Source of the DNA: Macrostomum lignano | Taxonomy: Eukaryota | Reading direction: 5' to 3' | Assembly: GCA_002269645.1 (NCBI GenBank) | Contig: NIVC01000396.1 | Coordinates: forward strand, 542,862-606,861 | Length of the DNA stretch: 64,000 nt | In this document: piece by piece, positions 12,831 through 55,623 of the stretch | Position numbering within the stretch: the stretch's first letter is position 1 | Layout of the letters: each line of letters opens with the position of its first letter | Notes under the pieces: generated by a model | What the model saw: the letters and a program-made list of their open reading frames with translations, nothing else | What the model was told of the DNA's origin: nothing | Database searches by the model: none | Made by a program: the position numbers and the translations under genes

Positions 12831-12891
12831 AGAGCGTCTAATACCCGCTGGCCCAATCAAAACCATGAATAGTTAAATTTAACAATTAAAT

Positions 12892-14028
12892 CAGGGACTA
12901 CTCAAACATCGGGACGGGAAACTAGGCAAATCATGGCGAAGTTTTTACGAGGCTGGTTAAATCTATGGCCGCGCCAATGCAGCAGTAGCCATTTTCCATA
13001 TTTCAATAAATCTTCAATAAATTTTATATTTTATTATATCTGTGAATTTTAATATTCATGTGCTATCTGAATTTAACAGATTTAAGCATTGAATAGTCGG
13101 GAATACTCAGTAGATGTGAACTTGTCTGTTCCGCAATGTCACGCACTTCTAAGTTTTTTGTCTTTCTCTCTTGAACGGTGACGGATGATGGAGCCACCTT
13201 CGATGATCTCCGGACAAGTCCCTTAAAGAATGTGTTTGTTGCTCTTCGTGCCACACCTTGGACGTTGAAGTCAATGTAATGGAAGAAATTTTCAGCTATA
13301 GTTGTAAATAGTGTCTGCACTCTCGTTGCGCAAACGGGTGAGTGGGCAGTGAAGCATGCGTAGCAGAGGGTTAGAAATGAAAACAGCCACTCTGGGGGGT
13401 GCCGTAGCTTTCCCCGCGATAGTAACTGAGTAAATTCACCGGCTTCTTCTTTTGTGCTGTCCGCAAGTTCTCTGTCGACGCCTTCAATTTTCTCCTTGAC
13501 ACAGATATAGCCTGAAAAAGATCCATTTAGTACTCGTATCATCGCTGCTTCAGCACACCAAAAATACAATTAGTCTGGGGCTATATACTAATTAGATACA
13601 GCAAGAAAAGAAATCTTACCAGCGATGAAATAAGGTTCGGCAGGGCCTTTTTCCATCGCTCTCGCTCAACCGAGTCCTTCGGAAACAGATGAACTTTCGT
13701 AGCTAATCGTTCGGACTCGTAATTTGACTTGCAGCCAACAACGCTGCACTTTCTTGGCATTGATGCCAACAACACAAGCAGAAAAATCGAGCTTGTCCTA
13801 CGCGTCTGCCAGAAACTTAGCTGCTATAAAATAATGCAAGCATCCCTGCTAGACTGTAGTGGAAATAACGGTATCACAAGCTTCAAATAATAGAAAATAA
13901 CCATAGACAACAAAGTATCGCTCTATACAAATAAGCCAGCCAGCCTCGTCAGCTGCTAACAAACCAGCCTCGTAAAAACTTCGCCATGATTTGCCTAGTT
14001 TCCCGTCCCGATGTTTGAGTAGTCCCTG
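12892..14028 (-). mobile_element. Internally deleted P-element-superfamily (THAP) transposon, 1137 bp
   Basis: Perfect 67-bp TIRs (cagggactactcaaacatcgggacggg...gctggtt) and 8-bp TSD AATTAAAT (12884-12891, 14029-14036). THAP domain MPRKCSVVGCKSNY...HLFPKD...RWKKALP starts at 13760. Transposase C-terminal remnant FSGYI...SRGKLRHP at 13063-13569. Confidence 0.93.
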
Positions 14029-14575: not shown

Positions 14576-16722
14576 TCAGCGGGTATTAGCAAAGTTGAAC
14601 ACCAGCGCCAGAACTACAGACAGAAAGGTGGATCGCAGCTCGGTCGCCGACTTAGTTGAGCTTTTTGTACCAGCCGTTGTTGTCGTAGCACTGGTAGGTG
14701 AGCCTTTTTTACCAGCCGTTGTTGTCGTAGCACTGGTAGGTGAGCCTTTTTTACCAGCCGTTGTTGTATTAGCACTGGTAGTTGGGCTTTCTGTAGCAGC
14801 CGATGTTGTATTAGCACTGGTAGTTGGGCTTTCTGTAGCAGCCGATGTTGTATTAGCACTGGTAGTTGGGCTTTCTGTAGCAGCCGATGTTGTATTAGCA
14901 CTGGTAGTTGGGCTTTCTGTAGCAGCCGATGTTGTATTGGCACTGGTAGTTGGGCTTTCTGTAGAAGCCGATGTTGTATTAGCACTGGTAGTTGGGCTTT
15001 CTGTAGCAGCCGATGTTGTATTAGCACTGGTAGTTGGGCTTTCTGTAGCAGCCGATGTTGTATTGGCACTGTTAGTTGGGCTTTCTGTAGCAGCCGATGT
15101 TGTATTAGCACTGGTAGTTGGGCTTTCTGTAGCAGCCGATGTTGTATTAGCACTGGTAGTTGGGCTTTCTGTAGCAGCCGATGTTGTATTAGCACTGGTA
15201 GTTGGGCTTTCTGTAGCAGCCGATGTTGTATTAGCACTGGTAGTTGGGCTTTCTGTAGCAGCCGATGTTGTATTAGCACTGGTAGTTGGGCTTTCTGTAG
15301 CAGCCGATGTTGTATTAGCACTGGTAGTTGGGCTTTCTGTAGCAGCCGATGTTGTATTAGCACTGGTAGTTGGGCTTTCTGTAGCAGCCGATGTTGTATT
15401 AGCACTGGTAGTTGGGCTTTCTGTAGCAGCCGATGTTGTATTAGCACTGGTAGTTGGGCTTTCTGTAGCAGCCGATGTTGTATTAGCACTGGTAGTTGGG
15501 CTTTCTGTAGCAGCCGATGTAGTATTAGCACTGGTAGTTGGGCTTTCTGTAGCAGCCGATGTTGTATTAGCACTGGTAGTTGGGCTTTCTGTAGCAGCCG
15601 ATGTTGTATTAGCACTGGTAGTTGGGCTTTCTGTAGCAGCCGATGTTGTATTAGCACTGGTAGTTGGGCTTTCTGTAGCAGCCGATGTTGTATTAGCACT
15701 GGTAGTTGGGCTTTCTGTAGCAGCCGATGTTGTATTAGCACTGGTAGTTGGGCTTTCTGTAGCAGCCGATGTTGTATTAGCACTGGTAGTTGGGCTTTCT
15801 GTAGCAGCCGATGTTGTATTAGCACTGGTAGTTGGGCTTTCTGTAGCAGCCGATGTTGTATTAGCACTGGTAGTTGGGCTTTCTGTAGCAGCCGATGTTG
15901 TATTAGCACTGGTAGTTGGGCTTTCTGTAGCAGCCGATGTTGTATTGGCACTGTTAGTTGGGCTTTCTGTAGCAGCCGATGTTGTATTAGCACTGGTAGT
16001 TGGGCTTTCTGTAGCAGCCGATGTTGTATTAGCACTGGTAGTTGGGCTTTCTGTAGCAGCCGATGTTGTATTAGCACTGGTAGTTGGGCTTTCTGTAGCA
16101 GCCGATGTTGTATTAGCACTGGTAGTTGGGCTTTCTGTAGCAGCCGATGTTGTATTAGCACTGGTAGTTGGGCTTTCTGTAGCAGCCGATGTTGTATTAG
16201 CACTGGTAGTTGGGCTTTCTGTAGCAGCCGATGTTGTATTAGCACTGGTAGTTGGGCTTTCTGTAGCAGCCGATGTTGTATTAGCACTGGTAGTTGGGCT
16301 TTCTGTAGCAGCCGATGTTGTATTAGCACTGGTAGTTGGGCTTTCTGTAGCAGCCGATGTTGTATTAGCACTGGTAGTTGGGCTTTCTGTAGCAGCCGAT
16401 GTTGTATTGGCACTGGTAGTTGGGCTTTCTGTAGAAGCCGATGTTGTATTAGCACTGGTAGTTGGGCTTTCTGTAGCAGCCGATGTTGTATTGGCACTGG
16501 TAGTTGGGCTACTCCTAGGTTTGCGAGTACTTTTCGGCGCGGCAGATTGCAGGAGCGCCAGAATGATGGCTGGGGATCGGAAAATTAGGATTTAAAGCAG
16601 GTTACCTGCAGGTGCTCGTACAGATACTAAGAAGCCAAAGCTCAGGTTTACTTACCCCAGCCAGCAGGTGTCGAGCATTCATTGCCAATCCAAATTTGAG
16701 CAATATTGAGTACTAGAAGCAT
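14576..16722 (-). CDS. Predicted GPI-anchored mucin-like glycoprotein (~680 aa)
   Basis: Main exon 16569-14576 follows the acceptor ttttccgatccccag and reads (A)IILALLQSAAPKSTRKPRSSPTT, then ~41 x SANTTSAATESPTT, then GKKGSPTSATTTTAG...SATELRSTFLSVVLALVFNFANTR*. Upstream mini-exon ends at 16656 (GGG|gtaagt). ATG is at 16722 (phase-compatible) or 16682 (needs one extra G). Confidence 0.8.
14760..16505. repeat. 42-bp coding tandem repeat (~41 near-identical copies)
   Basis: Unit ttgtattagcactggtagttgggctttctgtagcagccgatg; encodes the mucin repeat on the minus strand. Confidence 0.97.
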
Positions 16723-16747
16723 GCGCCTGAAGTCCGCCTTCGACACC

Positions 16748-16754
16748 TTATATA
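16748..16754 (-). promoter_or_regulatory. Putative TATA box of the mucin gene
   Basis: TATATAA on the minus strand, ~30 nt above ATG 16722 and ~70 nt above ATG 16682. Confidence 0.45.
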
Positions 16755-17065
16755 CACGAGCTGGTCAGAGCATTAATTACGAGCTAAAATGCCAAGTCCT
16801 ACAGGAGAAGAAAAAATGGTCTGACATTTCCGAACTATACTTCGCACTTCAAGAACGAAAATATTTGGCTGTTGAATAAAGACAATAAATTTTTCTCGGA
16901 TTCAATAAAGTAAAATGTAAGCACCTCGAATATTGCTAAATGCTTTTCAGTGCGTCGCTGACAATTTCGAATAGAAATTGGCACACAAACTGCGTTAAAT
17001 TTCGAGCTCTGTTTTTTCTAAGATACCTGAACCCAGACAAAATTGCAGGTTAATGCAAAGCACAA

Positions 17066-17074
17066 CGTCTGTCC

Positions 17075-17118
<44 letters not shown>

Positions 17119-17170
17119 GTATTAGTGTCTTAGTGTCTTAGTGTCTGTCTGTCTGTTTGTCTGTCTTAGA

Positions 17171-17210
<40 letters not shown>

Positions 17211-17266
17211 TAGTGTCTTGTATGTCTGTCTGTCTGTCTGTGTGTCTTAGTGTCTGTCTGTCTGTG

Positions 17267-17309
<43 letters not shown>

Positions 17310-17395
17310 GTGTCTGTCTGTGTGTCTGTCTGTCTGTCTATCTGTATTAGTGTCTTAGTGTCTTAGTGTCTGTCTGTCTGTTTGTCTGTCTTAGA

Positions 17396-17443
<48 letters not shown>

Positions 17444-17455
17444 TAGTGTCTTGTA

Positions 17456-17490
<35 letters not shown>

Positions 17491-17583
17491 GTGTCTTAGT
17501 GTCTGTCTGTCTGTGTGTCTGTCTGTCTGTCTGTCTGTGTGTCTGTCTGTCTGTCTGTCTGTGTGTCTGTCTGTGTGTCTGTG

Positions 17584-17645
<62 letters not shown>
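17066..17645. repeat. (TCTG)n microsatellite with TCTTAGTG interruptions
   Basis: Directly visible. Contains an internal ~226-bp duplication (17112 vs 17338). Confidence 0.97.
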
Positions 17646-17649
<4 letters not shown>

Positions 17650-18114
17650 AAACTAGATTCTCGGTGATTTGACTATCATTCTATTTTTATGAGTTGCTTT
17701 TCCAGGCGAGCAGAATTGTTCTGTGACTCTTTCCACTGCATTTTCTGGTGAGATTAACATTTTATACTCGTAGTCTCGTAGTTTAGTTCGTAGACCTGCA
17801 AGCAAAGCTTGGAATCAGGTATCGGCGCAGGCTGGGAGACAGAGAGGCGATGGCATTTTCAGCATAAATATAATAAATATTTATTTAGGCCCACAGCCAG
17901 CGCTGAGGCAATTCTGCCCCGTTCCGCTGACTGCTGAGCGCATTCAAGCTCACCAATGCTGTACACAGGCCCGCAGTCACGCACACACGCTCTCACAGGG
18001 TGTACAGCGGCACCGAATTTCCAATCGTCAGGCATGTACACTGCCTGCGCCTTGGGTTGGTCGAATGTGGCACGACAGCCGACTTTTTAAGACGAGGTCA
18101 GAAGGGATTGCCAC

Positions 18115-19290
18115 TTGACAGTGTCTAAGGGATCGCCATTAGACAGTGTCTAAGGGATCGCCATTAGACAGTTTCTAAGGGATCGTCATTAGACAGTTTC
18201 TAAGGGATCGCCATTAGACAGTTTCTAAGGGATCGTCATTAGACAGTTTCTAAGGGATCGTCATTAGACAGTTTCAAAGGGATCGTCATTAGACAGTTTC
18301 TAAGGGATCGCCATTAGACAGTTTCTAAGGGATCGTCATTAGACAGTTTCTAAGGGATCGTCATTAGACAGTTTCTAAGGAATCATTGTTAGACAGTTTC
18401 TAAGAAGTCACCGTTAGACAGTTTCTAAGGGATCGCCATTAGACAGTTTCTAAAGGATCGCCATTAGACAGTTTCTAAGGAATCATTGTTAGACAGTTTC
18501 TAAGGGATCGCCATTAGACAGTTTCTAAGGGATCGTCATTAGACAGTTTCTAAGGGATCGCCATTAGACAGTTTCTAAGGGATCGCCATTAGACAGTTTC
18601 TAAGGGATCGTCATTAGACAGTTTCTAAGGGATCGCCATTAGACAGTTTCTAAGGGATCGCCATTAGACAGTTTCTAAGGGATCGTCATTAGACAGTTTC
18701 TAAGGGATCGCCATTAGACAGTATCTAAGGGATCGTCATTAGACAGTTTCTAAGGGATCGCCATTAGACAGTTTCTAAGGGATCGTCATTAGACAGTTTC
18801 TAAGGGATCGCCATTAGACAGTATCTAAGGGATCGTCATTAGACAGTTTCTAAGGGATCGCCATTAGACAGTATCTAAGGGATCGTCATTAGACAGTTTC
18901 TAAGGGATCGCCATTAGACAGTTTCTAAGGAATCGCCATTAGACAGTATCTAAGGGATCGTCATTAGACAGTTTCTAAGGGATCGCCATTAGACAGTATC
19001 TAAGGGATCGTCATTAGACAGTTTCTAAGGGATCGCCATTAGACAGTTTCTAAGGAATCACCATTAGACAGTTTCTAAGGGATCGCCATTAGACAGTTTC
19101 TAAGGAATCACCATTAGACAGTTTCTAAGGGATCGCCATTAGACAGTTTCTAAGGAATCACCATTAGACAGTTTCTAAGGGATCGCCATTAGACAGTTTC
19201 TAAGAAGTCACCGTTAGACAGTTTCTAAGGGATCGCCATTAGACAGTTTCTATGAAGTCACCGTTAGACAGTTTCTAAAGGATCGCCGTT
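18115..19290. repeat. 25-bp minisatellite (agacagtttctaagggatcgccatt)
   Basis: About 46 tandem copies with alternating variants (gcc/gtc, ttt/tat). Confidence 0.97.
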
Positions 19291-19789
19291 TTTGATCTAC
19301 TGCAGAGAAATACTTTAAATTTAAGCCAATTGTAAAAAATCATTCATCAGTTTAGTCATTCATGCCGCGAACGACTGGTGCTTGTATTTTCCACTTTCAC
19401 TTTTTACTTTAATAATAATCCAAAAGAGCCAGTCGGGCACAGTTTTGAGTACAAGAGCGTACGAGAGTTCATTAGCGCAGGTGCGAGACAGTACAGTGTG
19501 TTAGTGAAGACTGCGGTTACGGTGGCAGCTACAAGCTAAATCAAATTTTTTCGTTACTTTTGAAGGGAAAACCTTGCTGAAAAACCTAGTATGGGCTAAG
19601 CATACTGTAGGCTTTTGACTGTTGAAGCTATGAATATGAAAATTTTCTAAGCTTGTTTAAGTAGCAAATGAAATTCAGTAGCTCTATCTACTGAGGGGAA
19701 TCAGAATGTTACTACCTAACTATTTTTTTGTACGAAGCATTGGGGGAGCATGAATTTGTGACGGGAAATTATCCGTAGGGAATTTGGGA

Positions 19790-20435
19790 TGAGGAATTAA
19801 GGAATAGTGAGCTTTGCAATGGGCAATTAGGGAATGGAGAGTTGAGGAATAGGGAATAAAGCAATAAAAAAATTAGAGAAAGAGGAATTAGGGAACGGGG
19901 AATTAGGGAATCGGAATTAGGGAATGGGGAATTAGGAAATGGGGAATTAGGGAATGGGAAATTAGGGAATGGGGAATTATGGAATGGGGAATTAGGGAAT
20001 GGGGAATTAGGGAATGGGAAATTAGGGAATGGGGAATTAGGAAATGGGGAATTAGGGAATGGGAAATTAGGGAATGGGGAATTATGGAATGGGGAATTAG
20101 GGAATGGGGAATTATGGAATGGGGAATTAGGGACTGGGGAATGAGGAACTGGGGGATTAGGGGATGGGGAATTAGGAAATGGGGAATTAGGGAATGGGAA
20201 ATTAGGGACTGGGGAATGAGGAACTGGGGGATTAGGGGATGGGGAATTAGGAAATGGGGAATTAGGGAATGGGAAATTAGGGACTGGGGAATGAGGAACT
20301 GGGGGATTAGGGGATGGGGAATTAGGGACTGGGGAATGAGGAACTGGGGAATTAGGGAATGGGGAATTAGGGAATGGGGGAATTAAGGAATGGCGAATTA
20401 GGGAATGTGGAATTAGGGAATGGGGAATTAGATAA
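19790..20435. repeat. 15-bp G-rich repeat (gggaatggggaatta)n
   Basis: About 40 copies. Begins at the Ly6 stop codon; each unit carries TTAGGG and GGAATG. Confidence 0.95.
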
Positions 20436-22992
20436 TGGGGAATTGAGCATGAGGAACTAGGACCACAGAGGCGAACAGGCGGCAGCACAGAGCGGCCAGG
20501 GCGGCCGCTGCGGTGGTGGCGAGGCCGGGACCGATCCCCGCAGCGGAGTCCTGCACAGACCGAGGGTCATCGTGCAGGATGCTGCCGCCAGAGGTGGCAT
20601 TGCAGACCCCGTCGGCGTGGCAGATGGTGCAGTTGAAGGTGTAGGCCGGGCAGGGGCCGCAGCCGGCGTTGAAAAACTGCAGAGGGGCAGATGGGGCGCG
20701 CGACCTGCAGAATCCCCTTAAGATAGGGAAAATAATATAGAATGACAATAATCTTGAATCAATGAGATTATACCTTCAGTTATCCTAAAATGACCTACAG
20801 TGTCACTAAGGGGATCATGGCCAACATTTATCCCATCGGATAAAATGACCTACAATGTCACTAAGAGGATCATGGCCAACACTTATCCCATCGGATAAAA
20901 TGACCTACAATGTCACTAAGAGGATCATGGCCAACATTTATCCCATCGGATAAAATGACCTACAATGTCACTAAGAGGATCATGGCCAACATTTATCCCA
21001 TCGGATAAAATGACCTACAATGTCACTAAGAGGATCATGGCCAACACTTATCCCATCGGATAAAATGACCTACAATGTCACTAAGAGGATCATGGCCAAC
21101 ACTTATCCCATCGGATAAAATGACCTACAATGTCACTAAGGGGATCATGGCCAACATTTATCCCATCGGATAAAATGACCTACAATGTCACTAAGGGGAT
21201 CATGGCCAACATTTATTCCCATTGGAAAAAATGACCTACAATGTCACTAAGGGGATCATGGCCAACATTTATCCCATCGGATAAAATGACCTACAATGTC
21301 ACTAAGGGGATCATGGCCAACATTTATTCCCATTGGAAAAAATGACCTACAATGTCACTAAGGGGATCATGGCCAGCACTTATCCCATTGGAAAAAATGA
21401 CCTACAATGTCACTAAGGTCTAAGGGGATCATGGCCAACATTTATTTCAATAGAAAACATGACCTTCAATGTTACGAGCAAACAATGTCTCCCGGATGCC
21501 AATATAGAAGTCCAGAGGCTCACCGGCAGGCGGGAGGCGGACTTCTCGTAGAAGCAGCGGTGCTCGCCGGGCGGGCAGATCACGGACTCGGTGGGCTCCA
21601 CCCGGGAGACCTTGGCGTGGAGGCAGAAGCGGTAGTCTGCATGCAGCCGCTTCCACAGCTTCTGGTTGCAGAGATCCTTGCCGTGGCAGTTGGAGATGTA
21701 CTCATCCACTGGTCCGTTGGCACCGCTGTACGAGGCCTTGATCCGGCCGCCGCAGCCCGCCGTGTACGTCTGCGGGGTGTCCGTAGTGTGAGGATCGGTG
21801 CTGAGTGAGCTGGGATATCATTGAGAATCAGTGCTGCGAGTTGGGATGTGGGGATGGAGGTGTCGGCCTGATGTTCAACTGTACACAGAAGACGACATCG
21901 AGGCTGCGATTTCAACAGTTCGTCTACCTCGGCGGTCTGGTTCCCGACGCCCGCGAGTATCTGCACAGGACTGCCTTCAGTCTGAGACCCTCCTGACTAC
22001 CAGAGGCCGCCTTCAAAAGATCGGCGACGAGGGAGTCACCAGCGCGGCACTCCACCGCCTCGCGGACCTGGTCCGCCTAAGCGATCTGTTGCGCCGTCGG
22101 CAACTCCAGCTGGCCGACTACATCAACCCTGTCGAGCCGTACTGCCCGCAGCCGGTGAAATTGCAGCTGCCGATGACGCTGCAGGCACCCCACAGGCACT
22201 CGGCGCTTGGATTCGGTCGGTGGCGCGACATACGTTAGCGCAGGGGCTTTGAGGCTCTCTTCAAGACAGCGTATTATGTACTAGATAAGAGCGGGGATCT
22301 GAGGGGATCAGTGCAGTGAGAGCAGGGGTCTGAGGAGATCAGTGCAGTGAGAGCAGGGATCTGAGGGGATCAGTGCAGTGAGAGCAGGGATCTGAGGGGA
22401 TCAGTGCAGTGAGAGCAGGGGTCTGAGGAGATCAGTGCAGTGAGAGCAGGGGTCTGAGGGGATCAGTGCAGTGAGAGCAGGGATCTGAGGAGATCAGTGC
22501 AGTGAGAGCAGGGGTCTGAGGGGATCAGTGCAGTGAGAGCAGGGATCTGAGGAGATCAGTGCAGTGAGAGCAGGGATCTGAGGGGATCAGTGCAGTGAGA
22601 GCAGGGATCTGAGGGGATCAGTGTAGTGAGAGCAGGGATCTGAGGAGATCAGTGCAGTGAGAGCAGGGGTCTGAGGGGATCAGTGCAGTGAGAGCAGGGG
22701 TCTGAGGAGATCAGTGCAGTGAGAGCAGGGATTCGAGGGATCAGTGCAGTGAGAGCAGGGATTCGAGGGGATCAGAGCAGCGCCCTACCAAGTGGCTGAC
22801 TCCGTGGTAGCCATACACATATTCGTAGCAGGTGTTGACTCCATCCTCGCAGGTCATGTTGCCACGGGGATCAGCAAATTTGGTGGCATTGTAGCAGGTG
22901 ATCGGCGCCCTTCTCTGCTGCAGAGTCGGGCTGATCAGCATGCAGGCCAGCAGCAGAAAAAAGCAAAAGCAGGCAGGCTGGCAAAATGGCAT
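20428..22992 (-). CDS. Two-domain Ly6/uPAR (three-finger) GPI-anchored protein, 3 exons, ~232 aa
   Basis: Exons 22992-22789, 21769-21524 and 20676-20428, all phase 0. Signal peptide MPFCQPACFCFFLLLACMLIS; domain 1 ITCY...TC...TCY...AGC...NCHGKDLCN; domain 2 FCL...IC...RCF...AGCGPC...CTICHADGVCN; hydrophobic tail LATTAAAALAALCCRLFASVVLV. Confidence 0.85.
20790..21470. repeat. 55-bp minisatellite filling Ly6 intron 2
   Basis: Unit atgacctacaatgtcactaagaggatcatggccaacatttatcccatcggataaa, ~12 copies. Confidence 0.95.
21880..22230 (+). mobile_element. Short RTE-like LINE 3' fragment in Ly6 intron 1
   Basis: gacgacatcgaggctgcgatt...cagttcgtctacctcggcggtctggttccc, shared with the 49870-50350 LINE segment. 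Confidence 0.75.
22290..22775. repeat. 31-bp minisatellite in Ly6 intron 1
   Basis: Unit gggatcagtgcagtgagagcagggatctgag, ~15 copies. Confidence 0.95.
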
Positions 22993-23554
22993 TCCAGCTG
23001 CTTCAAACAGCCGCTCAGCTCTGGTTCCACCGAGCTGCTTCGTTCGAACTCCGTTGCCGATGGAAATGGAAATTCCCCGAGCACGAATCTTCCTCGACGA
23101 ACGCTTTGAGCTCAAAAGTTTATTTCAGCTAGAAAGAACTACATGTAGAAGGGTTGGTTCCGCCATAGACAAGTCTTTTTAGTTTTGCAGAGGTAAAGCA
23201 AGGAACGGGAGGGCTGATATATTCCTGCACGGTAAGGAATTCCATTGTCGGATGATTCATCGTGCAGGAATGCACAAAACCGTGCAGGAATGCATTTCTG
23301 CGCCTAATGCTTTTTCAGTGAGATTTTACCATAGACATCCATTCCTGCACGCAAAAGAGTGCAAGAATGCCATTCTTGCATAGGAAATCAGCCGACAATG
23401 ATTAACAAAACTACAAGGGGGAGATTTACTCCAACCCCCCCGACGATTTTTTGCTGCACAGGGACGGAGCAACGCAGGCATTAACTTTTTATTTCAAAGG
23501 TCCATGACACTCATAAAGTGAGCGAGTACACCAGTTCACGCTGCTGTGGTAGGC

Positions 23555-24140
23555 TAGATGGGGACAAGTGGATAGGGACAGGTAGATGGGGACAAGTGGA
23601 TAGGGACAGGTAGATGGGGACAAGTGGATAGGGACAGGTAGATGGGGACAAGCGGATAGGGACAGGTAGATGGGGACACGTAGATGGGGACAGGTAGATG
23701 CGGGACAGGTATAGATGGGGAACAGGTAGATGGGGACAGGTAGATGGGGACAGGTAGATGGGGACAGGTAGATGGGGAACAGGTAGATGGGGGACGGGTA
23801 GATGGGGAACAGGTAGATGGGGGACGGGTAGATGGGGAACAGGTAGATGGTGACGGGTAGATGGGGACAGGAAGATGGTGACAGGTAGATGGGGACAGGT
23901 AGATGGTGACGGGTAGATGGGGACAGGTAGATGGTGACGGGTAGATGGGGACAGGTAGATGGTGACGGGTAGATGGTGACGGGTAGATGGGGACAGGTAG
24001 ATGGTGACGGGTAGATGGGGACGGGTAGATGGTGACGGGTAGATGGGGACAGGTAGATGGTGACGGGTAGATGGGGACAGGTAGATGGGGGACGGGTAGA
24101 TGGGGACATGTAGATGGTGACGGGTAGATGGTGGCGGGTA
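23555..24140. repeat. 14-bp G-rich minisatellite (ggacaggtagatgg)n
   Basis: About 40 copies with tgacggg variants and a longer gatagg-containing variant at the left end. Confidence 0.95.
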
Positions 24141-24779
24141 GACAAAAGAGGAAAGCGTGCGTGCCCCATGATTAGTCCAATAGAAAAAGCGAGTCAGAGA
24201 GCGGCGGTCTGCACAGGGATTAAACAAGAGATTATTACAGCCGAGTCAGCCTGACGCCAAGCCAGCCAGACAAAAATATTATTTATTGAAATTAGCGCAC
24301 AACTTCAATGGGAAGGGGTATTCAACGTTGGACCGCAACAGTGAGCGAAACACAAAAAACCAACGAGCGAAAACACCGGAAAAAATGAGAGTACAGTTGG
24401 GAAATGAATGAATGAGAGGCAGAGCAGCATCGGCATTTTAGCATAAGCTTCACCATAATCTTGGCACCGATTTAAACGTATAAACGCTAAGATAATTAAT
24501 TACACGCTAAGAGATTAACAATTAGCTGAAAATATTTACATTGAATCGTGACGACTATGCAACTTTGTTGAGGCCACTCAGACTGCCGGTGCAGTGCACA
24601 GCCGGGCCTCGACCAGCTGCCCTTTCATTGCTTTTGTTTCTCTTTTGTTTCTAGCTAGTAGCTAGAAGTTTAAAATAGAAAAAAGCGGATGAGAAATCAA
24701 AACTCATTCTGTCTGCAACGAAGGTCAAAAAGATTTATTGGAATTGATAGCAGGCAAGTAGGAAAGAGACAGCCGGGCG

Positions 24780-24812
24780 GAGAAAGACAGACAGACAAAC
24801 AGACAGACGCTA

Positions 24813-24845
<33 letters not shown>

Positions 24846-24848
24846 CTA

Positions 24849-24891
<43 letters not shown>

Positions 24892-24984
24892 TAGACAGAC
24901 ACTTGAGACAGACAGACAAGACAGACAGACAGACAGACACTGAGACAGAGACCAAGACAGACAGACAAGACAGACAGACAGACA

Positions 24985-25033
<49 letters not shown>

Positions 25034-25036
25034 CTA

Positions 25037-25067
<31 letters not shown>

Positions 25068-25074
25068 GAGACAT

Positions 25075-25113
<39 letters not shown>

Positions 25114-25116
25114 CTA

Positions 25117-25151
<35 letters not shown>

Positions 25152-25255
25152 GAGACATACAGACAGACAGACAGATAGACAGACACTTGAGACAGACAGA
25201 CAAGACAGACAGACAGACAGACAGACACTGAGACAGAGACCAAGACAGACAGACA

Positions 25256-25306
<51 letters not shown>

Positions 25307-25365
25307 AACTAAGACAGACACTAAGACAGACAGACAGATAGACAGACACTGAGACAGACAATCTG
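24780..25365. repeat. (GACA)n microsatellite with CACTAAGA interruptions
   Basis: Reverse complement of the TCTG/TCTTAGTG family. Internal duplication at 24891 vs ~25175. Confidence 0.97.
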
Positions 25366-25667
25366 AGAGGTCAGAAAATACAGACGGGACCCACAATCCC
25401 ACAAAACTACATCCTTTTAACAGCAGCGCTGGAGCTGGCGCATGCTGACCTTCAACATGGGCAAACGCAGCATGCAGATACTGTAGGGTTAAAGGGGAAT
25501 TATCGATATAAAAAATAAACATAGATTAGTAAAAACCAATGAAAGAATGGCCTGGCCGCACGGGCTCAGTGCAGGAAGAAAAGGACATTAAATGGAGCAT
25601 CAAATCCAGCATTCAGTCAGCAGTCCTCAGCGCAGTCGATCACTGCTAAACTGTCAGTGTCGCAGAT

Positions 25668-28600
25668 TTATTGGCCTTGCGCTTTGCGAAATCTTGGCGG
25701 CAGTTCTCGATTGCTGTTGTGAAAAGTGCGCGGTCCTCCGCCACCGCCGCCGCCACCGCCGCCGCCGTATCTTCCAGATCGACCGCCTACGCCTCCGCCA
25801 GCAGGGAATCTTCGACCGCCGCCGCCGCCGCCGCCTCCTCCTCCGCCGCCGCAGTTGTTCCTCCGCTGAAACCGATGCTGTTGGTTCCGGTTGCGGTTCC
25901 GGTTACGCACAACTTCCGTAAATTCGTCCTTGACACCGTGGAATGACTTGTTGTCGTAATAGTCGGCATCGAATTGCAGCGACATGTCGTCGTCTTCAAA
26001 TGTGGCGCCCTGCTGCTGCTGCTGCGCGCCGGGCCTTGCGGTACGGCGCCAACGCCAGCCGCCTGCTGCTGGGCAGCCTCTGGAGGAGCGGCAAAGCCCT
26101 GCTGGCTGAAGCTGAAATTCTTCGGCAAGTGTTGAGCAAAGTAGCGAACGAACTTTTCGTGAAATTTGCCCTTCAACTGGCCGAGGCTCCTGTTGTGCAC
26201 GTTGAAGCGCTCCCACACCAGCTTGTCGATGTCAGTGTCGATTGTCTTGTCCAGTCGGTCGATGTCCGACTTTAGCTGGGTTCGGCGCGTCTGCAGAACT
26301 TCTAGCAGGACGTCGCCTCCGCCACCGCCACCACCTTCGCCTTCGCGGCCGTCGTCGCTAACTTCGCCGACACCGGACCTGGTCTTCAAGATTTGCTCAA
26401 TCTCGTCAATTTTTGCCTCCCAGTGACGCTGCTTGTCCAGGAAGTCCGCGATGAAGGTGGAAAATCGTTTGAATGCGTTCAGGCGTTGCAGGTGATTATC
26501 CGAGGACAGGTGGGCGGACACCGATGGCAGTTTGACCTGCGGACGCGGGGTCAGGTAGGGCGCAATAAATACAAGGCATGCCACTTGCACACTGGCTTCA
26601 CCAATAACAGCGGTATTGTGGGTGAGCGAGCGACTGAGCGTGCTCAGGTTCGACTCCTGAATCTGGGGACAGGTTTGAAAAGCAGGGATTCTAACCGATG
26701 GGAGCTCACACTGGTTCCCAGAACGGGATTCGAACTCGGGTCCTCTAAATGAAATTCTAACCAATAGGAGCTCACACCGGTTCCCAAAACGGGATTCGAA
26801 CCTGGGTCGTCTAAATGAAATTCTAACCAATAGGAGCTCACACCGGTTCCCAAAACGGGATTCGAATCCGGGTCGTCTAAATGAAATTCTAACCAATAGG
26901 AGCTCACACCGGTTCCCAGAACGGGATTCGAACTCGGGTCGTCTAAATGAAATTCTAACCAATAGGAGCTCACACCGGTTCTCAGAACGGGATTCGAACT
27001 CGGGTCCTCTAAATGAAATTCTAACCAATAGGAGCTCACACCGGTTCCCAAAACGGGATTCGAACCTGGGTCGTCTAAATGAAATTCTAACCAATAGGAG
27101 CTCACACCGGTTCCCAAAACGGGATTCGAATCCGGGTCGTCTAAATGAAATTCTAACCAATAGGAGCTCACACCGGTTCCCAGAACGGGATTCGAACTCG
27201 GGTCGTCTAAATGAAATTCTAACCAATAGGAGCTCACACCGGTTCTCAGAACGGGATTCGAACTCGGGTCCTCTAAATGAAATTCTAATCAATAGGAGCT
27301 CACACCGGTTCCCAAAACGGGATTCGAACCTGGGTCGTCTAAATGAAATTCTAACCAATAGGAGCTCACACCGGTTCCCAGAACGGGATTCGAACCCGGG
27401 TCGTCTAAATGAAATTCTAACCGATGGGAGCTCACACCGGTTCCGAGAACGGATTCGAACTCGGGTCCTCTAAATGAAATTCTAACCAATAGGAGCTCAC
27501 ACCGGGTCCTCTAAATGAAATTCTGACCAATGGGAGCTCACACTGGCTCCCTGACCGGGATTCGAACCCGGGTCCTCTAAATGAAATTCTGACCTATGGG
27601 AGCTGACACCTGTTCCCTGACGGGGATTCGAACCCGGGTCCACTAAATGAAATTCTGACCAATGGGAGCTGACACCGGTCCCCTGACCAAGAGTCGAACC
27701 CGGGACCCTGGGCGACAACCGGGAATCCTAGTCGCTAGAGGCTCACAAATGGCGTATCTGCAGTGCCCCCCCCCCTCTGATCAGCCAACAGAACCAGCCT
27801 ACCTGCAAGCCGAAGCCGGTAGACGCCTGCGGCAGGTCCAATTCGACGTCCTCGTCGCGCAGCAGCTGCATGCCGCAGATGCCGCAGTAATCTTCAGTCG
27901 GCACAAATGGCCGCAGCTTCTCCGGCAGGCTGTCCGGCTCCAGCGCCGGCTGCCGGGCGGCCTGAGCGGCAACGGCGGCGGCTCGCTGGCTCCGGTTGAT
28001 GAGGCTGTCGCGCAGTTTGAAAAGCCGGTCCCCGTAGCCGGACGGCAGATGATTGTCGCAGAAGTAGTCCATGTCTACTAGGAACTCGCCGATAGCCGGC
28101 AGAATCACCGGATGTCGGGTTTCGTACAGCGGCCTGGCCGGGTAGACATTGGAGATGTACATGATGACGTAATCGTTGTACTTGAAGCGGCCCTCCATGC
28201 GCTGCACATAGTTGCGGGTGGCGGTGGCCCGCTGGGAGTCGTCGCGCAGCCGGTTGGACCGGCTCATGCTGTGCTGGTGCAGCAGACGGCCGAAGCGCAG
28301 CAGGTAGCCGGCCGCCATGGTCATGTCGCGGAACTCCTCGGGTGTCTCGTATCTGCCGCCGTGCTTGTAGGCGCACTGATTCGAGCTGACCTCGATGCTC
28401 AGCGCCTTGGAGCAGGCGTTGTCACCCTGGCACTGGCTGGGGCAGTAGGCTCGGCTCAGGGCGTCCTCTTTCAGGAACATGAACAGCAGAGGCAGGGCAT
28501 CGCTGATGAGATTCTCGCAGAACATTGACACGCTGCTGTTCACCTCCTGGCGTGCGGACAATTGCGGGGAAGGAGATGGACTGATTGACTGTGTATCTAC

Positions 28601-28714
28601 CGCTAGATAAGATGTAGTAAAGCTGCCCAACCATTAACCAAACGGACTGACCTCGATTGACACGACAAATTGATTAAAACTGTCTGTCTGTCTGTCTGTC
28701 TTAGTGTCTATCTA

Positions 28715-28761
<47 letters not shown>

Positions 28762-28764
28762 GTC

Positions 28765-28795
<31 letters not shown>

Positions 28796-28822
28796 GTCTC
28801 TGTCTGTCTGTCTGTCTATCTA

Positions 28823-28869
<47 letters not shown>

Positions 28870-28914
28870 GTCTCTGTCTGTCTGTCTTAGTGTCTGTCTG
28901 TCTGTCTGTCTTAG

Positions 28915-28951
<37 letters not shown>

Positions 28952-28955
28952 GCGA

Positions 28956-28991
<36 letters not shown>

Positions 28992-29055
28992 TAGTGTCTG
29001 TCTGTCTGTCTGTCTGTCTTAGTGTCTGTCTGTCTGTCTGTCTGTCTGTCTGCGA

Positions 29056-29127
<72 letters not shown>

Positions 29128-29193
29128 TAGTGTGTCTGTCTGTCTGTCTTAGTGTCTTAGTGTCTGTCTGTCTGTCTGTCTGTCTGTCTGCGA

Positions 29194-29245
<52 letters not shown>

Positions 29246-29322
29246 TAGTGTGTCTGTCTGTCTGTCTTAGTGTCTTAGTGTCTGTCTGTCTGTCTGTTTG
29301 TCTTAGTGTCTGTCTGTCTTAG

Positions 29323-29367
<45 letters not shown>

Positions 29368-29371
29368 GCGA

Positions 29372-29435
<64 letters not shown>

Positions 29436-29613
29436 GTCTCTGTCTGTCTGTCTATCTGTCTGTCTGTCTGTCTGCCTGTCTTAAGTGTCTGTATGTCTGT
29501 CTGTCTTAGTGTCTGTCTGTCTGTCTTAGTGTGTCTGTCTGTCTGTCTGTCTGGCTGTCTGTCTGTCTGTCTTAGTGTCTTAGTGTGTCTGTCTGTCTTA
29601 GTGTCTGTCTTAG

Positions 29614-29682
<69 letters not shown>

Positions 29683-29841
29683 TAAGTGTCTGTATGTCTG
29701 TCTGTCTGTCTGTCTGTCTGTCTTAAGTGTCTGTATGTCTGTCTGTCTGTCTTAGTGTGTCTGTCTGTCTGTCTGTCTGTCTGTGTGTATGTCTTAGTGT
29801 CTTAGTGTCTTAGTGTCTGTCTGTCTGTCTGTCTGTCTTAG

Positions 29842-29898
<57 letters not shown>

Positions 29899-29903
29899 GA
29901 CTA

Positions 29904-29984
<81 letters not shown>

Positions 29985-29985
29985 A

Positions 29986-30070
<85 letters not shown>

Positions 30071-36000: not shown

Positions 36001-39000
36001 GCTCGGCACCTGAGCGTGGAAAATTGCGAGCACAGTATGAGCGATGTACAGAATGACCTCTGATCTAGTATGACCGATTTACTAAATAACTCCCTCCCCC
36101 ATCTCAATATGACCGAACCATCAAATGACCACTACTTCAATATGACCGATGCACTCAATGACCCGCAGTTTCAAATGAACAGCATCTTAGTTATGACCAA
36201 ATCTAGATGACCTTCAGTTCAGTTATGACCAAATCTAGATGACCTTCAGTTCAGTTATGACCAAATCTAGATGACCTTCAGTTCAGTTATGACCAAATCT
36301 AGATGACCTTCAAGTTCAGATATGACCAAATCTAGATGACCTTCAGTTTAGTTATGACCAAATCTAGATGACCTTCAAGTTCAGATATGACCAAATTTAG
36401 ATGACCTTCAGTTCAGTTATGACCAAATCTAGATGACCTTCAGTTCAGTTATGACCAAATGACCTATGATTTAGTATGACCAGAAGCTGTCATACTAAGC
36501 TGCCAAAACGCTCACCTTCTTGGCCAGACTGCCGTCCTCGTTGCGCTGAAAGAACGGCTGACCGGGCAGACTGGCGTCCAGCAGCATCCACAGCTGCTTG
36601 GAGCTGACAAACATGGGGAAATGACCGGAATTGGCCACCTGCAGCCGGTTTGGCAGTTCGAACTCCGGCTCCGGCAGCTCGGCGTCCCGCAGGCCGGCGC
36701 ACAGATCGTAGAAGTTTTTGCGGACCTCCCGGCACAGCACCGGGTTTTTAGTGACGAACAGCTGGCGAAGATGGTCGAACTGCGGCTCCGGCGCGTCCTC
36801 ATTGTCGGAACCGACGTCGACGGCTGAAGACGCGACTGCGGCGGCCTCCTCTTCGTAGGTGTCGGTGGCATCGCTGTTGGTTGTGCGATTCCGGTTCCTG
36901 ACGCGGCCGCGGTGCCGGCCTCTGTGCCGCTGGTCGGCCTCGCAGCCGGCCGCGTCGCCAGCGTCATCGGCGGCGTCCGCGTCCTCGTCAGACTGGGCGC
37001 CATCGTCGGCGGCGTCGGGATCGACCTTTGATAGTTCGAGGGCGACAACCTTCGAGGATTTATCATTTTTCAGACATCCCACTGAACCACTGTTGCTGAC
37101 TCCCTCCATGACATATTGCTGACTAGTCAAATGACCTACTAATGACCGACCCAATCGATGAATGACCCACCTGCTAACTGACCCTCTGATTCTGACCCAC
37201 TGCTGACTGCCCGTTCTATTACTAATGAGGCACTCACTCGATGGCTCACTGAACACCTACCCATTCTATGACCCACTGATGACTGACCCATTCTATGACC
37301 CACTGATGACTGACCCATTCTATGACCAACTGATGACTGACCCATTCTATGACCCACTGATGACTGACCCATTCTATGACCAACTGATGACTGGCCCATT
37401 CTATGACCCACTGATGACTGGCTCATTTTATGACCCACTGATGACTGGCTCATTTTATGACCCACTGATGACTGGCTCTTTTTTTGACCAACTGATGACT
37501 GACCCATTCTATGACCCACTGATGACTGACCCATTTTATGACCCACTGATGACTGACCCTCATTTTATGACCCACTGATGACTGATCTATGACCCACTGA
37601 TGACTGATCTATGACCCACTGATGACTGATCTATGACCCACTGGTGACTGATCTATGACCCACTGATCGACTGATGATAAAAGCTCTCAAACGCACCAGT
37701 CTGTACAGGCGGCGCCGCGGGATAATCGGGTTGGCCTCCGAGCGGACCTGCAGCCAATAGTTGGAAAATTCGGAGAACATTCTAAACACGCAGCAAGTTG
37801 TCTTGCCTGTGCCGCTCCGACCAATGAGCAGCACTGGAGACTCGGAGCTCAGCTCGATGATAGCGTGCTCCTGCTCAGTGACACGGAACGGCAGATCAAT
37901 TCTCGCCTCGCCAGTGAGAATATCGGCAATGAGGCTGGCGTCCCAGCTATAGAACTTCATCATGTGATACTCGGTCTCCTTGGAGGCGCCAGGCGGCTGG
38001 AAACGGACGAGGTCGGAGGACCCGCCGCCACCGCCAGAAACGACACTGTAGGTGCGCGGCAGGATGCGACCAGCATTAGCGGCGTTGTCGCTGGCTAAAG
38101 CCGAGGCGGCTGCGGCTGCGGAGTTCAACTCGCGGGCAAGCGCGCAGGCGGCGCCACGCTTGTGCGCGGTGATCGCCCTGGTGATCTCCTCGGCTAGAGC
38201 TTCCGAGGATTCCACGATGGCCCACAGGCGCAGCACGTCGCAATAAATTCGGCCCTGCGGACCGGACCGCTTCGGGCTGAAGGTGACGGCCCGCTCCCAC
38301 AGCAGGCTGGCCTGGCCGCCCAGGCTGGTCTGGTAGAACTGCAAGCCCAGACCGGCGGCCGACTCCGGCAGGCGGACCGGCTTAGCCAGAGAGCGCCAGC
38401 CGCGCCCGCTGGCCAGTTTTAATAGGCGCCTAGCCAATCGGCGCCTCAGTTGGCGCCACGTGTTCCGACGGCGCCGAAGAGCGTTCCATAGTTCCACCTG
38501 TAGGCATATTAGGCATTAAAAGGGGGTTGTAGCGTCGGACTCACCACTGAAAGGTCGGGGGTTCGATTCCCTATCTACTTGGAACAATTTGTGGCCTTGA
38601 GCAAGACACTTAACTCTGCATTGTTTCAGTTCACCCAGCTGTAGAGTGTGCACCAGCATTAGCTGGGGTAATTGAGGCTGTGTGTGGCGACCCCCCTCCC
38701 CCAGTCCTTGGACTGAACAGCCGGACGCAGCCTTCAGATGCGCCGTGCAATAGCTGCGGCTGAGCTGTCGGTTGCACATCTGGCCCAATTGGGGCAGGCG
38801 TAATCAATTATTATTATTTAGACATACATGTACGAGTTCATAGAACCGCTGCAAGGTGACCAAGTGTACTGCAATAGCACAGAACATGTACAGCAGGGGT
38901 AGGCAAACTCCGGCCACATGCAGCCCGCAAAGCCTCTCTATCCGGCCCTCGGGTCCTTTGAAACTTCACAATAGCAATCCGGCCCGCTCAATTTCTATCT

Positions 39001-55370: not shown

Positions 55371-55623
55371 ACGTGGTATTCAGTAGATAGTGTCCATTGT
55401 TCTGGAATCATACTGTACGATACGACACGGATATGCTTTACTGATTCCATGTACTTTTCCGAGGCAATTAAAATTTTGAGGCTGTTGTGCTGCGCAGTTG
55501 CGGATCGCTTCGAGTATCGCTTGTTTCTAAGAACAAAGAGAAGCAATCCGTCGCGGACTACTTAAATTTTTCTGCATTAGCGGTGCATGGGACAGACGTG
55601 CAGAGCACATATTTACGATCTAC

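What the first reader, a model, noticed from the sequence alone, without database searches (positions are those of the whole stretch)
26680..27720. Intronic satellite built from a tRNA-Glu-like unit, with a divergence gradient and 240-bp higher-order repeat
Seen: on the minus strand, units near 27500-27720 read TGGTCAGAATT-tcatttaga-GGACCCGGGTTCGAATCCCGGTCAGGGA. Established: eukaryotic tRNA-Glu ends in ...GGCCCGGGTTCGATTCCCGGTCAGGGA and has TGGTTAGGATT in its D arm; here the anticodon arm is replaced by ~9 nt. Toward 26680 the units drift (cccggtcaggga to cccgttttggga) and homogenise in a 4-unit cycle repeated ~2.5 times. Inference: a tRNA or SINE-head fragment seeded the array, leaving ~16 tandem Pol III B-boxes (TFIIIC sites) sense to the host gene. 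It could act as an insulator or boundary, or yield tRNA-like small RNAs. It is the one intron array whose seed can be identified.
Basis: partly seen in the sequence, partly recalled or inferred. Interest (0 to 1): 0.7.

Follow-up and report, generated by a model that had tools for sequence, protein, structure and literature searches.

The report
tRNA-Glu-derived minisatellite filling an intron
A 1-kb run of 66-base repeats inside one intron of a flatworm gene descends from a decayed copy of a glutamate tRNA, a tidy but ordinary example of a tandem repeat seeded by a tRNA-like sequence, with no sign that it still does anything.

Summary
The array is real. About 15 head-to-tail units of 66 bp lie on the minus strand at 27678-26715, inside a 1266-nt GT-AG intron (27802-26537) of a TRANK1-like gene in a Macrostomum-like flatworm. 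The last ten units form a 4-unit higher-order repeat of 264 bp, not 240.

The first, divergent copy U0 (27739-27681) matches human tRNA-Glu(UUC) positions 11-70 at 49/60, far above every other isotype and every shuffle. A terminal partial copy keeps ...GGTTAGAATCCCTGCTTTTCA. Regular units match tRNA positions 12-72 with one 8-nt deletion. On their own, only their T arm and 3' acceptor are significant. The claimed D-arm match is not.

Nothing indicates function:
- ARAGORN and the Rfam tRNA model find no tRNA.
- Substitutions in the T stem break pairs without compensation.
- Folding is no better than for shuffled sequence.
- The A box is gone.

The exact B box GGTTCGAATCC survives in 6 units and its core in 12 of 14, which recent homogenisation explains equally well. 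Almost every intron of this gene carries its own array, as in M. lignano. Verdict: a neutral tRNA-derived intronic minisatellite, a new member of a known kind.

The parts
26537..27802 (-). Host intron: 1266 nt, GT at 27802-27801, AG at 26538-26537, phase 0 on both sides. It lies in a TRANK1-like gene transcribed on the minus strand.
   Evidence: Sequence read. The upstream exon ORF ends ...GFGLQ at 27803 and the downstream exon ORF starts VKLPSV at 26536. The gene was identified from the helicase exon.
27741..27753 (-). GCCATTTGTGAGC, the counterpart of the 11-12-nt spacer (GCCAGTGTGAGC / CCGGTGTGAGC) that precedes the tRNA-like part in every unit. It is probably the original 5' flank of the seed.
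   Evidence: Read directly. The 7-mer TGTGAGC sits in the same position relative to the tRNA-like body as in all units.
27681..27739 (-). U0, the oldest and most tRNA-like copy. It covers tRNA-Glu(UUC) positions 11-70: D loop, complete anticodon arm (anticodon mutated TTC to GTC), T arm with loop TTCGACT, and the 3' acceptor strand. The 5' acceptor strand is missing.
   Evidence: 49/60 identical to human tRNA-Glu-TTC-1 with one gap. Score 73 against 39 for the best non-Glu isotype; 0 of 500 shuffles reach it. The reference tRNA sequence was checked in PMC12310068, PMC12293987 and PMC12217144.
27506..27678 (-). Units 1-3, the early type (TCCCATTGGTCAGAATT...CCCGGGTTCGAATCCCGGTCAGGGA). Unit 3 is cut to 41 nt by a 25-nt deletion between CCGG repeats.
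   Evidence: The T arm plus 3' acceptor is 24/25 identical to tRNA-Glu-TTC-4-1.
26715..27505 (-). Units 4-15, the late type (TCCTATTGGTTAGAATT...CCCGTTCTGGGA). Units 6-9, 10-13 and 14-15 form a 264-bp four-unit higher-order repeat (27374-27111, 27110-26847, 26846-26715).
   Evidence: Pairwise difference matrix, alignment A2. A late unit aligns to tRNA positions 12-72 with a single 8-nt deletion.
26676..26714 (-). Terminal direct partial unit: spacer, then TCCCATCGGTTAGAATCCCTGCTTTTCA. This is tRNA-Glu positions 1-37 with the D-loop deletion, but it still has the 5' anticodon stem and the loop with TTC.
   Evidence: nhmmer hit at 26713-26688, E = 1.1e-05. Alignments. Best panel hit is Glu_TTC_1, reached by 1 of 500 shuffles.
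26637..26678 (+). Inverted partial unit capping the array. On the plus strand it carries a T arm (TCAGG-TTCGACT-CCTGA), a 3' acceptor and the start of the spacer. It is U0-like, with an exact B box GGTTCGACTCC at 26647-26657.
   Evidence: Plus strand against U0-u1: score 34, 29/38 identical, 0 of 1000 shuffles reach it. B-box hit. No other array in the window has a clearly significant inverted flank; one (37259-37675) is marginal.

Best explanation
The array is a neutral, decaying intronic minisatellite that grew from one tRNA-Glu(UUC)-like insertion. The insertion was a retroposed tRNA pseudogene or the head of a tRNA-derived SINE.

Shown:
- The array lies in sense orientation in a phase-0 intron of a TRANK1-like gene of a Macrostomum-like flatworm.
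- Its outermost copies are the most tRNA-like. U0 has the D loop, the anticodon arm and the T loop TTCGACT. The terminal direct copy keeps the anticodon loop CTTTTCA. An inverted U0-like fragment caps the 3' end.
- Interior units lack 8 nt of the D loop and 8 nt of the 5' anticodon stem.
- The last ten units are a 264-bp four-unit higher-order repeat.

Inferred:
- A segment made of about 11 nt of flank plus the roughly 73-nt tRNA-like body was duplicated in tandem, giving an ancestral period of about 84 nt.
- Two deletions produced the 66-nt variant.
- Unequal crossing-over or gene conversion amplified and homogenised that variant in the interior, while the edges, which exchange least, kept older states.
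- An inversion affected the 3' edge.

The units are not tRNA genes and show no selection for tRNA-like structure. Their B-box cores are carried along by homogenisation. The array belongs to a lineage-wide tendency for introns to fill with tandem arrays.
For: Array and higher-order repeat.

tRNA-Glu identity:
- U0 against Glu-TTC-1 is 49/60, score 73. Other Glu references score 53-57, the best non-Glu isotype 39, and shuffles at most 36.
- U0 is Glu-specific without its T arm (46 against 29).
- A late unit aligns to positions 12-72 with one 8-nt deletion.
- Terminal copy.
- Reference tRNAs were taken from the literature.

Edges older than the centre: the TTCGACT loop occurs only in U0 and the inverted fragment.

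No function visible:
- ARAGORN finds 0 genes at default settings.
- Rfam gives no tRNA hit at E<=10, even when U0 is offered as a 5'-truncated stretch.
- Of 12 stem pairs, none has a compensatory change; all 5 T-stem pairs vary only by breaking.
- Fold z-scores are -0.3 to +0.9.

Context:
- About 25 distinct arrays lie in the window, nearly one per intron.
- The M. lignano locus L008 shows the same landscape.
- Simple and tandem repeats make up 15% of the M. lignano genome (PMC5730564).
- Two other tRNA-related SINE-like heads lie in the neighbouring inter-exon gap of the same gene.
Against: - The reference tRNA-Glu is human, not the species' own, and 6 of its 72 nt come from memory and stem logic.
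- Regular units upstream of the T arm are not significantly tRNA-like by themselves (53/500 and 373/500 shuffles), so their assignment rests on being in register with U0 and the terminal copy.
- The T loop TTCGAATCC is invariant in all 14 units. That could reflect constraint, although a non-tRNA block of 14 columns (AGAATTTCATTTAG) is equally invariant.
- Neutrality is argued from absence of evidence. No expression, TFIIIC or population data exist here.
- No other copy of the family was found, so SINE and pseudogene origins cannot be separated.
Confidence: 0.72

Rival explanations
1. The array is a functional cluster of TFIIIC-binding B boxes (ETC-like or tDNA-like) inside a Pol II gene. It would act as a chromatin boundary or insulator, or as a roadblock for Pol II.
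For: The core GTTCGAATC is present in 12 of 14 units and the exact GGTTCGANTCC in 6, plus one on the plus strand in the inverted fragment. There are 22 hits with at most 1 mismatch in the window against 2.7 expected. The T-loop columns are invariant. From general knowledge, B-box-only sites bind TFIIIC in yeasts and mammals, and clustered tDNAs can act as barriers.
Against: Invariance is no greater than in a non-tRNA block of the unit. G52 or G53 is mutated in 8 of 14 units. The array is one of about 25 unrelated intron arrays in the window, so no special explanation is needed for its existence. There are no occupancy data.
Confidence: 0.08
2. The units are Pol III transcription units, or are processed from the intron, and yield tRNA-like small RNAs.
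For: They are sense to the host gene. B boxes are present. Five late units carry TTTT right after the T arm (units 6, 9, 10, 13, 14), which could terminate Pol III.
Against: The A-box region is destroyed by the D-loop deletion. The acceptor stem has only 4-5 pairs. The T stem is broken in most late units. Predicted folding is no better than for shuffles. ARAGORN and Rfam find no tRNA. Even a composite of the best-preserved pieces is not recognised as a tRNA.
Confidence: 0.04
3. The seed was the head of a dispersed tRNA-Glu-derived SINE family of this genome rather than a direct tRNA retropseudogene. This rival concerns origin only and is compatible with neutrality.
For: tRNA-related SINE-like heads occur in the neighbouring inter-exon gap. 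One is on the plus strand at 38525-38572, followed by a CORE-SINE-like motif. The other is on the minus strand around 39185-39115. SINE-derived tandem repeats are documented in squamates and a limpet (PMC10702118, PMC11121367).
Against: No SINE body, LINE-derived tail or simple-repeat tail is recognisable next to the array. The outer intron flanks show no similarity to anything else in the window. The two neighbouring SINE heads are Ile/Thr-like, not Glu-like. U0 is 82% identical to a genuine tRNA-Glu. Junctions reading A-CCA or A-CCG after the acceptor could be a relic of a mature tRNA 3' end.
Confidence: 0.35
4. The resemblance to tRNA-Glu is coincidental. A GC-rich hairpin with a TTCGA loop arose by chance in a minisatellite.
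For: Regular units upstream of the T arm are not significantly tRNA-like. The generic tRNA models are silent.
Against: The match of U0 spans 60 nt including the Glu-specific D loop and anticodon arm (0 of 500 shuffles). The terminal copy independently keeps GGTTAGAATCCCTGCTTTTCA.
Confidence: 0.02

Closest known systems
tRNA-related tandem repeat families of amphibians: PolIII/TAN (Cynops), OAX / satellite I (Xenopus), Rana/polIII. As summarised in PMC10702118.
   Same: Tandem arrays whose unit contains a tRNA-derived segment with a Pol III box B.
   Different: Those units are 200-750 nt and genome-wide abundant, and some are shown to be Pol III-transcribed. Here the unit is 66 nt and almost entirely tRNA-derived, at a single 1-kb intronic locus, with no evidence of transcription by Pol III.
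SINE-derived satellites (sSats) of squamate reptiles (PMC10702118) and PcH-Sat of the limpet Patella caerulea, proposed to derive from a Nin-SINE (PMC11121367).
   Same: Part of a tRNA-related retroposon amplified in tandem. Modest array sizes. Independent origins in many lineages.
   Different: In those cases a parent SINE family is known. Here no parent SINE could be identified, and the seed matches a genuine tRNA-Glu at 82%.
Higher-order-repeat organisation of satellites such as primate alpha satellite (general knowledge).
   Same: Identical multi-unit blocks (4 x 66 bp), a homogenised centre and more divergent edge monomers.
   Different: About 2.5 higher-order copies in 1 kb of an intron. 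Not centromeric. Thousands of times smaller.
ETC / COC sites and tDNA insulators, i.e. TFIIIC bound to B boxes without Pol III (general knowledge).
   Same: Clustered B-box motifs outside functional tRNA genes.
   Different: Those are defined by measured TFIIIC occupancy and boundary activity. Nothing of that kind is known for this locus, and 8 of 14 B boxes carry a G52 or G53 change.

Membership tests
Functional tRNA gene | Cloverleaf recognised by tRNA detectors (ARAGORN, Rfam RF00005) | tested here: not met
   ARAGORN finds 0 genes at default and -ps settings. Rfam gives no tRNA hit at the gathering score or at E<=10, even for U0 offered as a truncated stretch. The ARAGORN -ps80 'tRNA-Ser' calls are uninformative, because the same setting gives about 40 unrelated hits across the window.
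Functional tRNA gene | Complete acceptor, D, anticodon and T arms with paired stems | tested here: not met
   Regular units lack 8 nt of the D loop and the 5' anticodon stem. The acceptor stem has 4-5 of 7 pairs, and T-stem pairs are broken in most late units. A composite of the best pieces is still not called a tRNA.
tRNA-Glu-derived sequence (pseudogene or relic) | Significant, isotype-specific sequence similarity extending beyond the B box | tested here: met
   U0 matches at 49/60 over tRNA positions 11-70. Glu references rank 1-4 in a 30-tRNA panel, and 0 of 500 shuffles reach the score, with or without the T arm. For regular units alone, only the T arm and 3' acceptor are significant.
tRNA-derived SINE | tRNA-related head joined to a body, a LINE-derived 3' region and a simple-repeat or A-rich tail | tested here: not met
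   No body or tail is recognisable. The outer intron flanks match neither the unit nor anything else in the window.
tRNA-derived SINE | Many dispersed copies in the genome with target-site duplications | not testable with these tools
   There is no other copy in the 64-kb window. The metagenome scan gave only chance hits. The protein-space search with the array ORF gave nothing. The species' genome is not available here.
Minisatellite or satellite with higher-order repeat | Head-to-tail units, and multi-unit blocks more alike than neighbouring units | tested here: met
   TRF score 1427. Units 6=10=14, 8=12 and 9=13 show 0 differences, while neighbouring units differ by 2-6.
Satellite DNA in the strict sense | Long arrays at many loci, typically heterochromatic | not testable with these tools
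   Only one 1-kb intronic locus is visible, so 'minisatellite' is the safer term.
TFIIIC-bound ETC site or tDNA insulator | B-box consensus GGTTCGANTCC | tested here: met
   Exact in 6 units plus the inverted fragment. One mismatch in 8 units and in U0.
TFIIIC-bound ETC site or tDNA insulator | Measured TFIIIC occupancy and boundary activity | not testable with these tools
   Requires ChIP or CUT&Tag and reporter or deletion assays.
Pol III type-2 transcription unit | A box (TRGCNNAGTGG) at the proper distance upstream of the B box, with a T>=4 terminator downstream | tested here: not met
   The A-box region is reduced to TTGGTYAGAAT by the D-loop deletion, matching 5 of 9 specified positions by my own count. 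TTTT follows the T arm in only 5 late units.

The most novel reading that the evidence does not exclude
The dozen or more B-box cores form a genuine clustered TFIIIC-binding element inside a Pol II gene of a flatworm. More broadly, array-filled introns may be a lineage-specific mode of intron growth or gain in macrostomid flatworms, and this array would be the one case where the captured seed, a tRNA relic, can be traced. A relative's contig (L007) encodes two neighbouring exons of this gene as one uninterrupted ORF, so at least one array-filled intron is absent there.
Probability: 0.07. Interest if true: 0.6.

Novelty: new member of a known kind. Interest (0 to 1): 0.3.

Why it matters
The array is a clean, small-scale record of how a tandem array is born from a tRNA-like insertion and then matures. 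The edge copies preserve successive ancestral states: full anticodon arm, then loss of the D loop, then loss of the anticodon stem. The interior is homogenised into a higher-order repeat. That makes it a useful teaching or model case for minisatellite evolution, and a possible marker for studying why macrostomid introns fill with arrays. It does not by itself reveal a new mechanism or function. If TFIIIC did bind it, it would be a natural multi-copy B-box array in an animal outside the usual models.

Tried and rejected
1. ARAGORN at 80% threshold 'tRNA-Ser(aga)' across unit junctions. Rejected, because the same setting gives about 40 unrelated hits across the window, including in another array.
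2. The Rfam tRNA model found nothing on the region, the whole window, or U0 offered as a 5'-truncated stretch.
3. The metagenome scan for AGAATTTCATTTAGNNGACCC gave 6 single hits with no flanking similarity, which is the number expected by chance.
4. The protein-space search with the 197-aa ORF that runs through the array found no hit.
5. I tested whether the intron's first 49 nt (27802-27754) or last ~100 nt (26640-26537) are further degenerate units. They are not significant (500/500 and 367/500; 157/500 and 162/500 shuffles reach the scores).
6. I tested whether the 5' part of regular units matches another isotype better (an Ile/Thr-type D arm). No panel member is significant.
7. I tested whether inverted partial units cap arrays in general. 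Only this array shows it clearly; 37259-37675 is marginal.
8. A composite of the best-preserved pieces was given to ARAGORN and was not recognised as a tRNA.
9. An exact-sequence look-up of the window's helicase exon found nothing on record.
10. A coding 22-aa repeat was considered and rejected. The upstream exon frame stops 60 nt into the intron (27743). Two open frames in a 66-nt unit are not unusual. GC content drops relative to the exons.
Full report
**1. What is there.** On the minus strand, Tandem Repeats Finder reports a 66-bp period at 26688-27509 (12.5 copies, 94% matches, score 1427) and at 27502-27704 (3.1 copies). Anchoring on TTTCATTTAG gives 15 units with spacings of 66 nt, except one of 41 and one of 65. 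The unit-specific 21-mer occurs 15 times against 0 expected. No copy exists elsewhere in the window (nhmmer with a unit profile; BLAST of the units and flanks).

**2. Context.**
- The array lies in an intron, 27802-26537, which is 1266 nt long. The upstream exon ends ...GFGLQ|GTAGGC, the downstream exon begins CCGCAG|GTC (VKLPSV...), and the intron is phase 0 on both sides.
- The gene runs on the minus strand from about 46.3 kb to about 25.7 kb. Its helicase exon matches 'TPR and ankyrin repeat-containing protein 1' (TRANK1) of many invertebrates, with a best identity of 58%.
- The neighbouring intronless stomatin gene is 68% identical over 97% of its length to a Macrostomum lignano protein. 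It is 79% identical at the DNA level over 865 bp to M. lignano contig NIVC01000029. The window therefore comes from a macrostomid-like flatworm (inference).
- Almost every intron of the TRANK1-like gene is nearly filled by its own unrelated array.
- The M. lignano locus shows the same landscape, and 15% of that genome is simple or tandem repeat (PMC5730564).

**3. Internal structure.**
- Units 1-3 (27678-27506) are of an early type. Unit 3 is truncated to 41 nt by a 25-nt deletion between CCGG repeats.
- Units 4-15 (27505-26715) are of a late type. The two blocks differ at 8-11 of 66 positions, and late units differ at 0-6.
- Units 6=10=14, 8=12 and 9=13 are identical, and 7, 11 and 15 differ by 1-2. 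This is a four-unit, 264-bp higher-order repeat present about 2.5 times.

**4. Is it tRNA-derived?** Generic detectors say nothing:
- ARAGORN finds no gene.
- Rfam gives no tRNA hit at the gathering score or at E<=10.
- Lowering ARAGORN's threshold yields 'tRNA-Ser' calls, but equally about 40 unrelated false positives.

I therefore tested sequence similarity directly. Reference tRNAs came from the literature:
- ten full human tRNAs, including Glu_TTC_4-1 (PMC12217144);
- the 5' 34 nt of Glu-TTC-1 (PMC12310068);
- the 3' 32 nt of Glu-TTC-1 (tRF3E, PMC12293987);
- the 6 nt in between, which follow from the anticodon and stem complementarity and from my memory.

All 30 fold with the stated anticodon in ARAGORN.

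**5. Results of the similarity test.**
- The first, divergent copy U0 (27739-27681) aligns to Glu-TTC-1 positions 11-70 with 49/60 identities and one gap, score 73. The other Glu references score 53-57, the best non-Glu isotype (His) scores 39, and the best-of-panel score in 500 dinucleotide shuffles never exceeds 36.
- With its T arm removed, U0 is still Glu-specific (46 against a shuffle maximum of 29).
- A late unit aligns to positions 12-72 with a single 8-nt deletion. TCATTTAGAGGA lines up without gaps with TCACCCAGGCGG.
- The part of a regular unit upstream of the T arm is not significant by itself (53/500 and 373/500 shuffles reach the score). The T arm plus 3' acceptor of the early units is 24/25 identical to Glu_TTC_4-1.
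- The terminal direct partial unit (26714-26676) reads spacer-TCCCATCGGTTAGAATCCCTGCTTTTCA. It has the D-loop deletion but keeps the 5' anticodon stem and the loop with TTC.
- Immediately beyond it, on the plus strand (26637-26678), lies an inverted, U0-like fragment: T arm with TTCGACT, 3' acceptor and the start of the spacer. It is 29/38 identical, and 0 of 1000 shuffles reach its score. No other array in the window has a clearly significant inverted cap.
- The outer 49 nt and ~100 nt of the intron are unrelated to the unit.

**6. Reconstruction (inference).**
- One tRNA-Glu(UUC)-like insertion lay in sense orientation in a pre-existing intron.
- A segment of about 11 nt of flank (GCCAKTGTGAGC) plus the tRNA-like body was duplicated in tandem, giving an ancestral period of about 84 nt.
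- An 8-nt D-loop deletion followed. It is shared by all units except U0.
- An 8-nt deletion of the 5' anticodon stem followed. It is shared by units 1-15 but not by U0 or the terminal copy.
- The 66-nt form was then amplified and homogenised, most recently as a 264-bp block.
- The edges retain older states. The TTCGACT loop, as in Glu-TTC-1, occurs only in U0 and the inverted fragment.
- Whether the seed was a retroposed tRNA or a SINE head is open. Two other tRNA-related SINE-like heads lie in the neighbouring inter-exon gap of the same gene, but they are Ile/Thr-like. No SINE body or tail is seen here. Several junctions read A-CCA or A-CCG after the acceptor, which might be a relic of a mature 3' end or mere CpG decay.

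**7. Function.**
- The B box GGTTCGAATCC is exact in 6 units. AGTTCGAATCC occurs in 6 and GATTCGAATCC in 2. U0 has GGTTCGACTCT.
- The A-box region is destroyed by the D-loop deletion.
- Over 12 pairs of the acceptor and T stems, no pair shows a compensatory change, and all five T-stem pairs vary only by becoming unpaired.
- Predicted folding energies of early, late, U0 and terminal copies are indistinguishable from those of shuffles (z from -0.3 to +0.9).
- The invariant T loop is matched by an equally invariant non-tRNA block, as expected from recent homogenisation.

I therefore regard the array as a neutral relic. TFIIIC binding remains possible but untested, and Pol III transcription is unlikely.

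**8. Comparison and novelty.** tRNA-related tandem families are already described. These include PolIII/TAN, OAX / satellite I and Rana/polIII, and SINE-derived satellites in squamates (PMC10702118) and a limpet (PMC11121367). This is a new, small, intronic member of that kind in a flatworm. Its notable feature is edge copies that document the steps from tRNA to satellite unit. Interest is modest.

Noticed in passing
window 25700-46263 (minus-strand TRANK1-like gene); also 14600-25400 and 54100-64000: Nearly every intron is almost filled by its own, mutually unrelated tandem array. Units are 4, 14-66 bp, and arrays are 0.1-1.9 kb. M. lignano locus L008 looks the same. This is a striking genome architecture that deserves its own analysis.
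   Followed up: partly
window 36034-36512 compared with locus L007 3001-4581: A relative's contig (GCA_029979725.1) encodes the two window exons flanking this array-filled intron as one uninterrupted 526-aa ORF, and has almost no tandem arrays. At least one array-filled intron is therefore lineage-specific, either gained here or lost there.
   Followed up: partly
window 38525-38800 (+): A tRNA-related head (best match Ile-like, GGTCGGGGGTTCGATTCCC) is followed by CCTTGAGCAAGACACTTAAC..., which resembles the core of CORE-SINE / MIR-like elements (from memory). It is probably a SINE antisense to the host gene.
   Followed up: partly
window ~39185-39115 (-): A second tRNA-related head (Thr/Gly-like...GTCCCGGGTTCGATTC...) lies in sense orientation at the start of the same inter-exon gap.
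   Followed up: partly
every 66-bp unit, e.g. 27434-27410 (-): Each unit contains a 5' splice-site-like GTGAGC and, 31 nt on, a 3' splice-site-like TTTCATTTAG. This gives about 15 cryptic donor and acceptor pairs inside the intron. Their use could not be tested.
   Followed up: no
27752-27750, about 27546-27544, about 26714-26712 (-): After the 3' acceptor and discriminator, three junctions read CCA and most others CCG. This may be a relic of a post-transcriptionally added CCA, implying a retroposed mature tRNA, or it may be CpG decay. Unresolved.
   Followed up: no
window 2296-3624 (-); 4559-5005 (+); 10300-12900 and 48800-50400: There is an intronless stomatin / MEC-2-like gene whose closest hit is M. 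lignano, a Tc1/mariner-like HTH ORF, and several GC-rich non-LTR (RTE-like) retrotransposon fragments.
   Followed up: partly
window 17067-17648, 24781-25360, 28680-30068: Very long tetranucleotide arrays are present: (GTCT)n x145, (AGAC)n x143 and (CTGT)n x345. The M. lignano locus has (AGAT)n x492.
   Followed up: no
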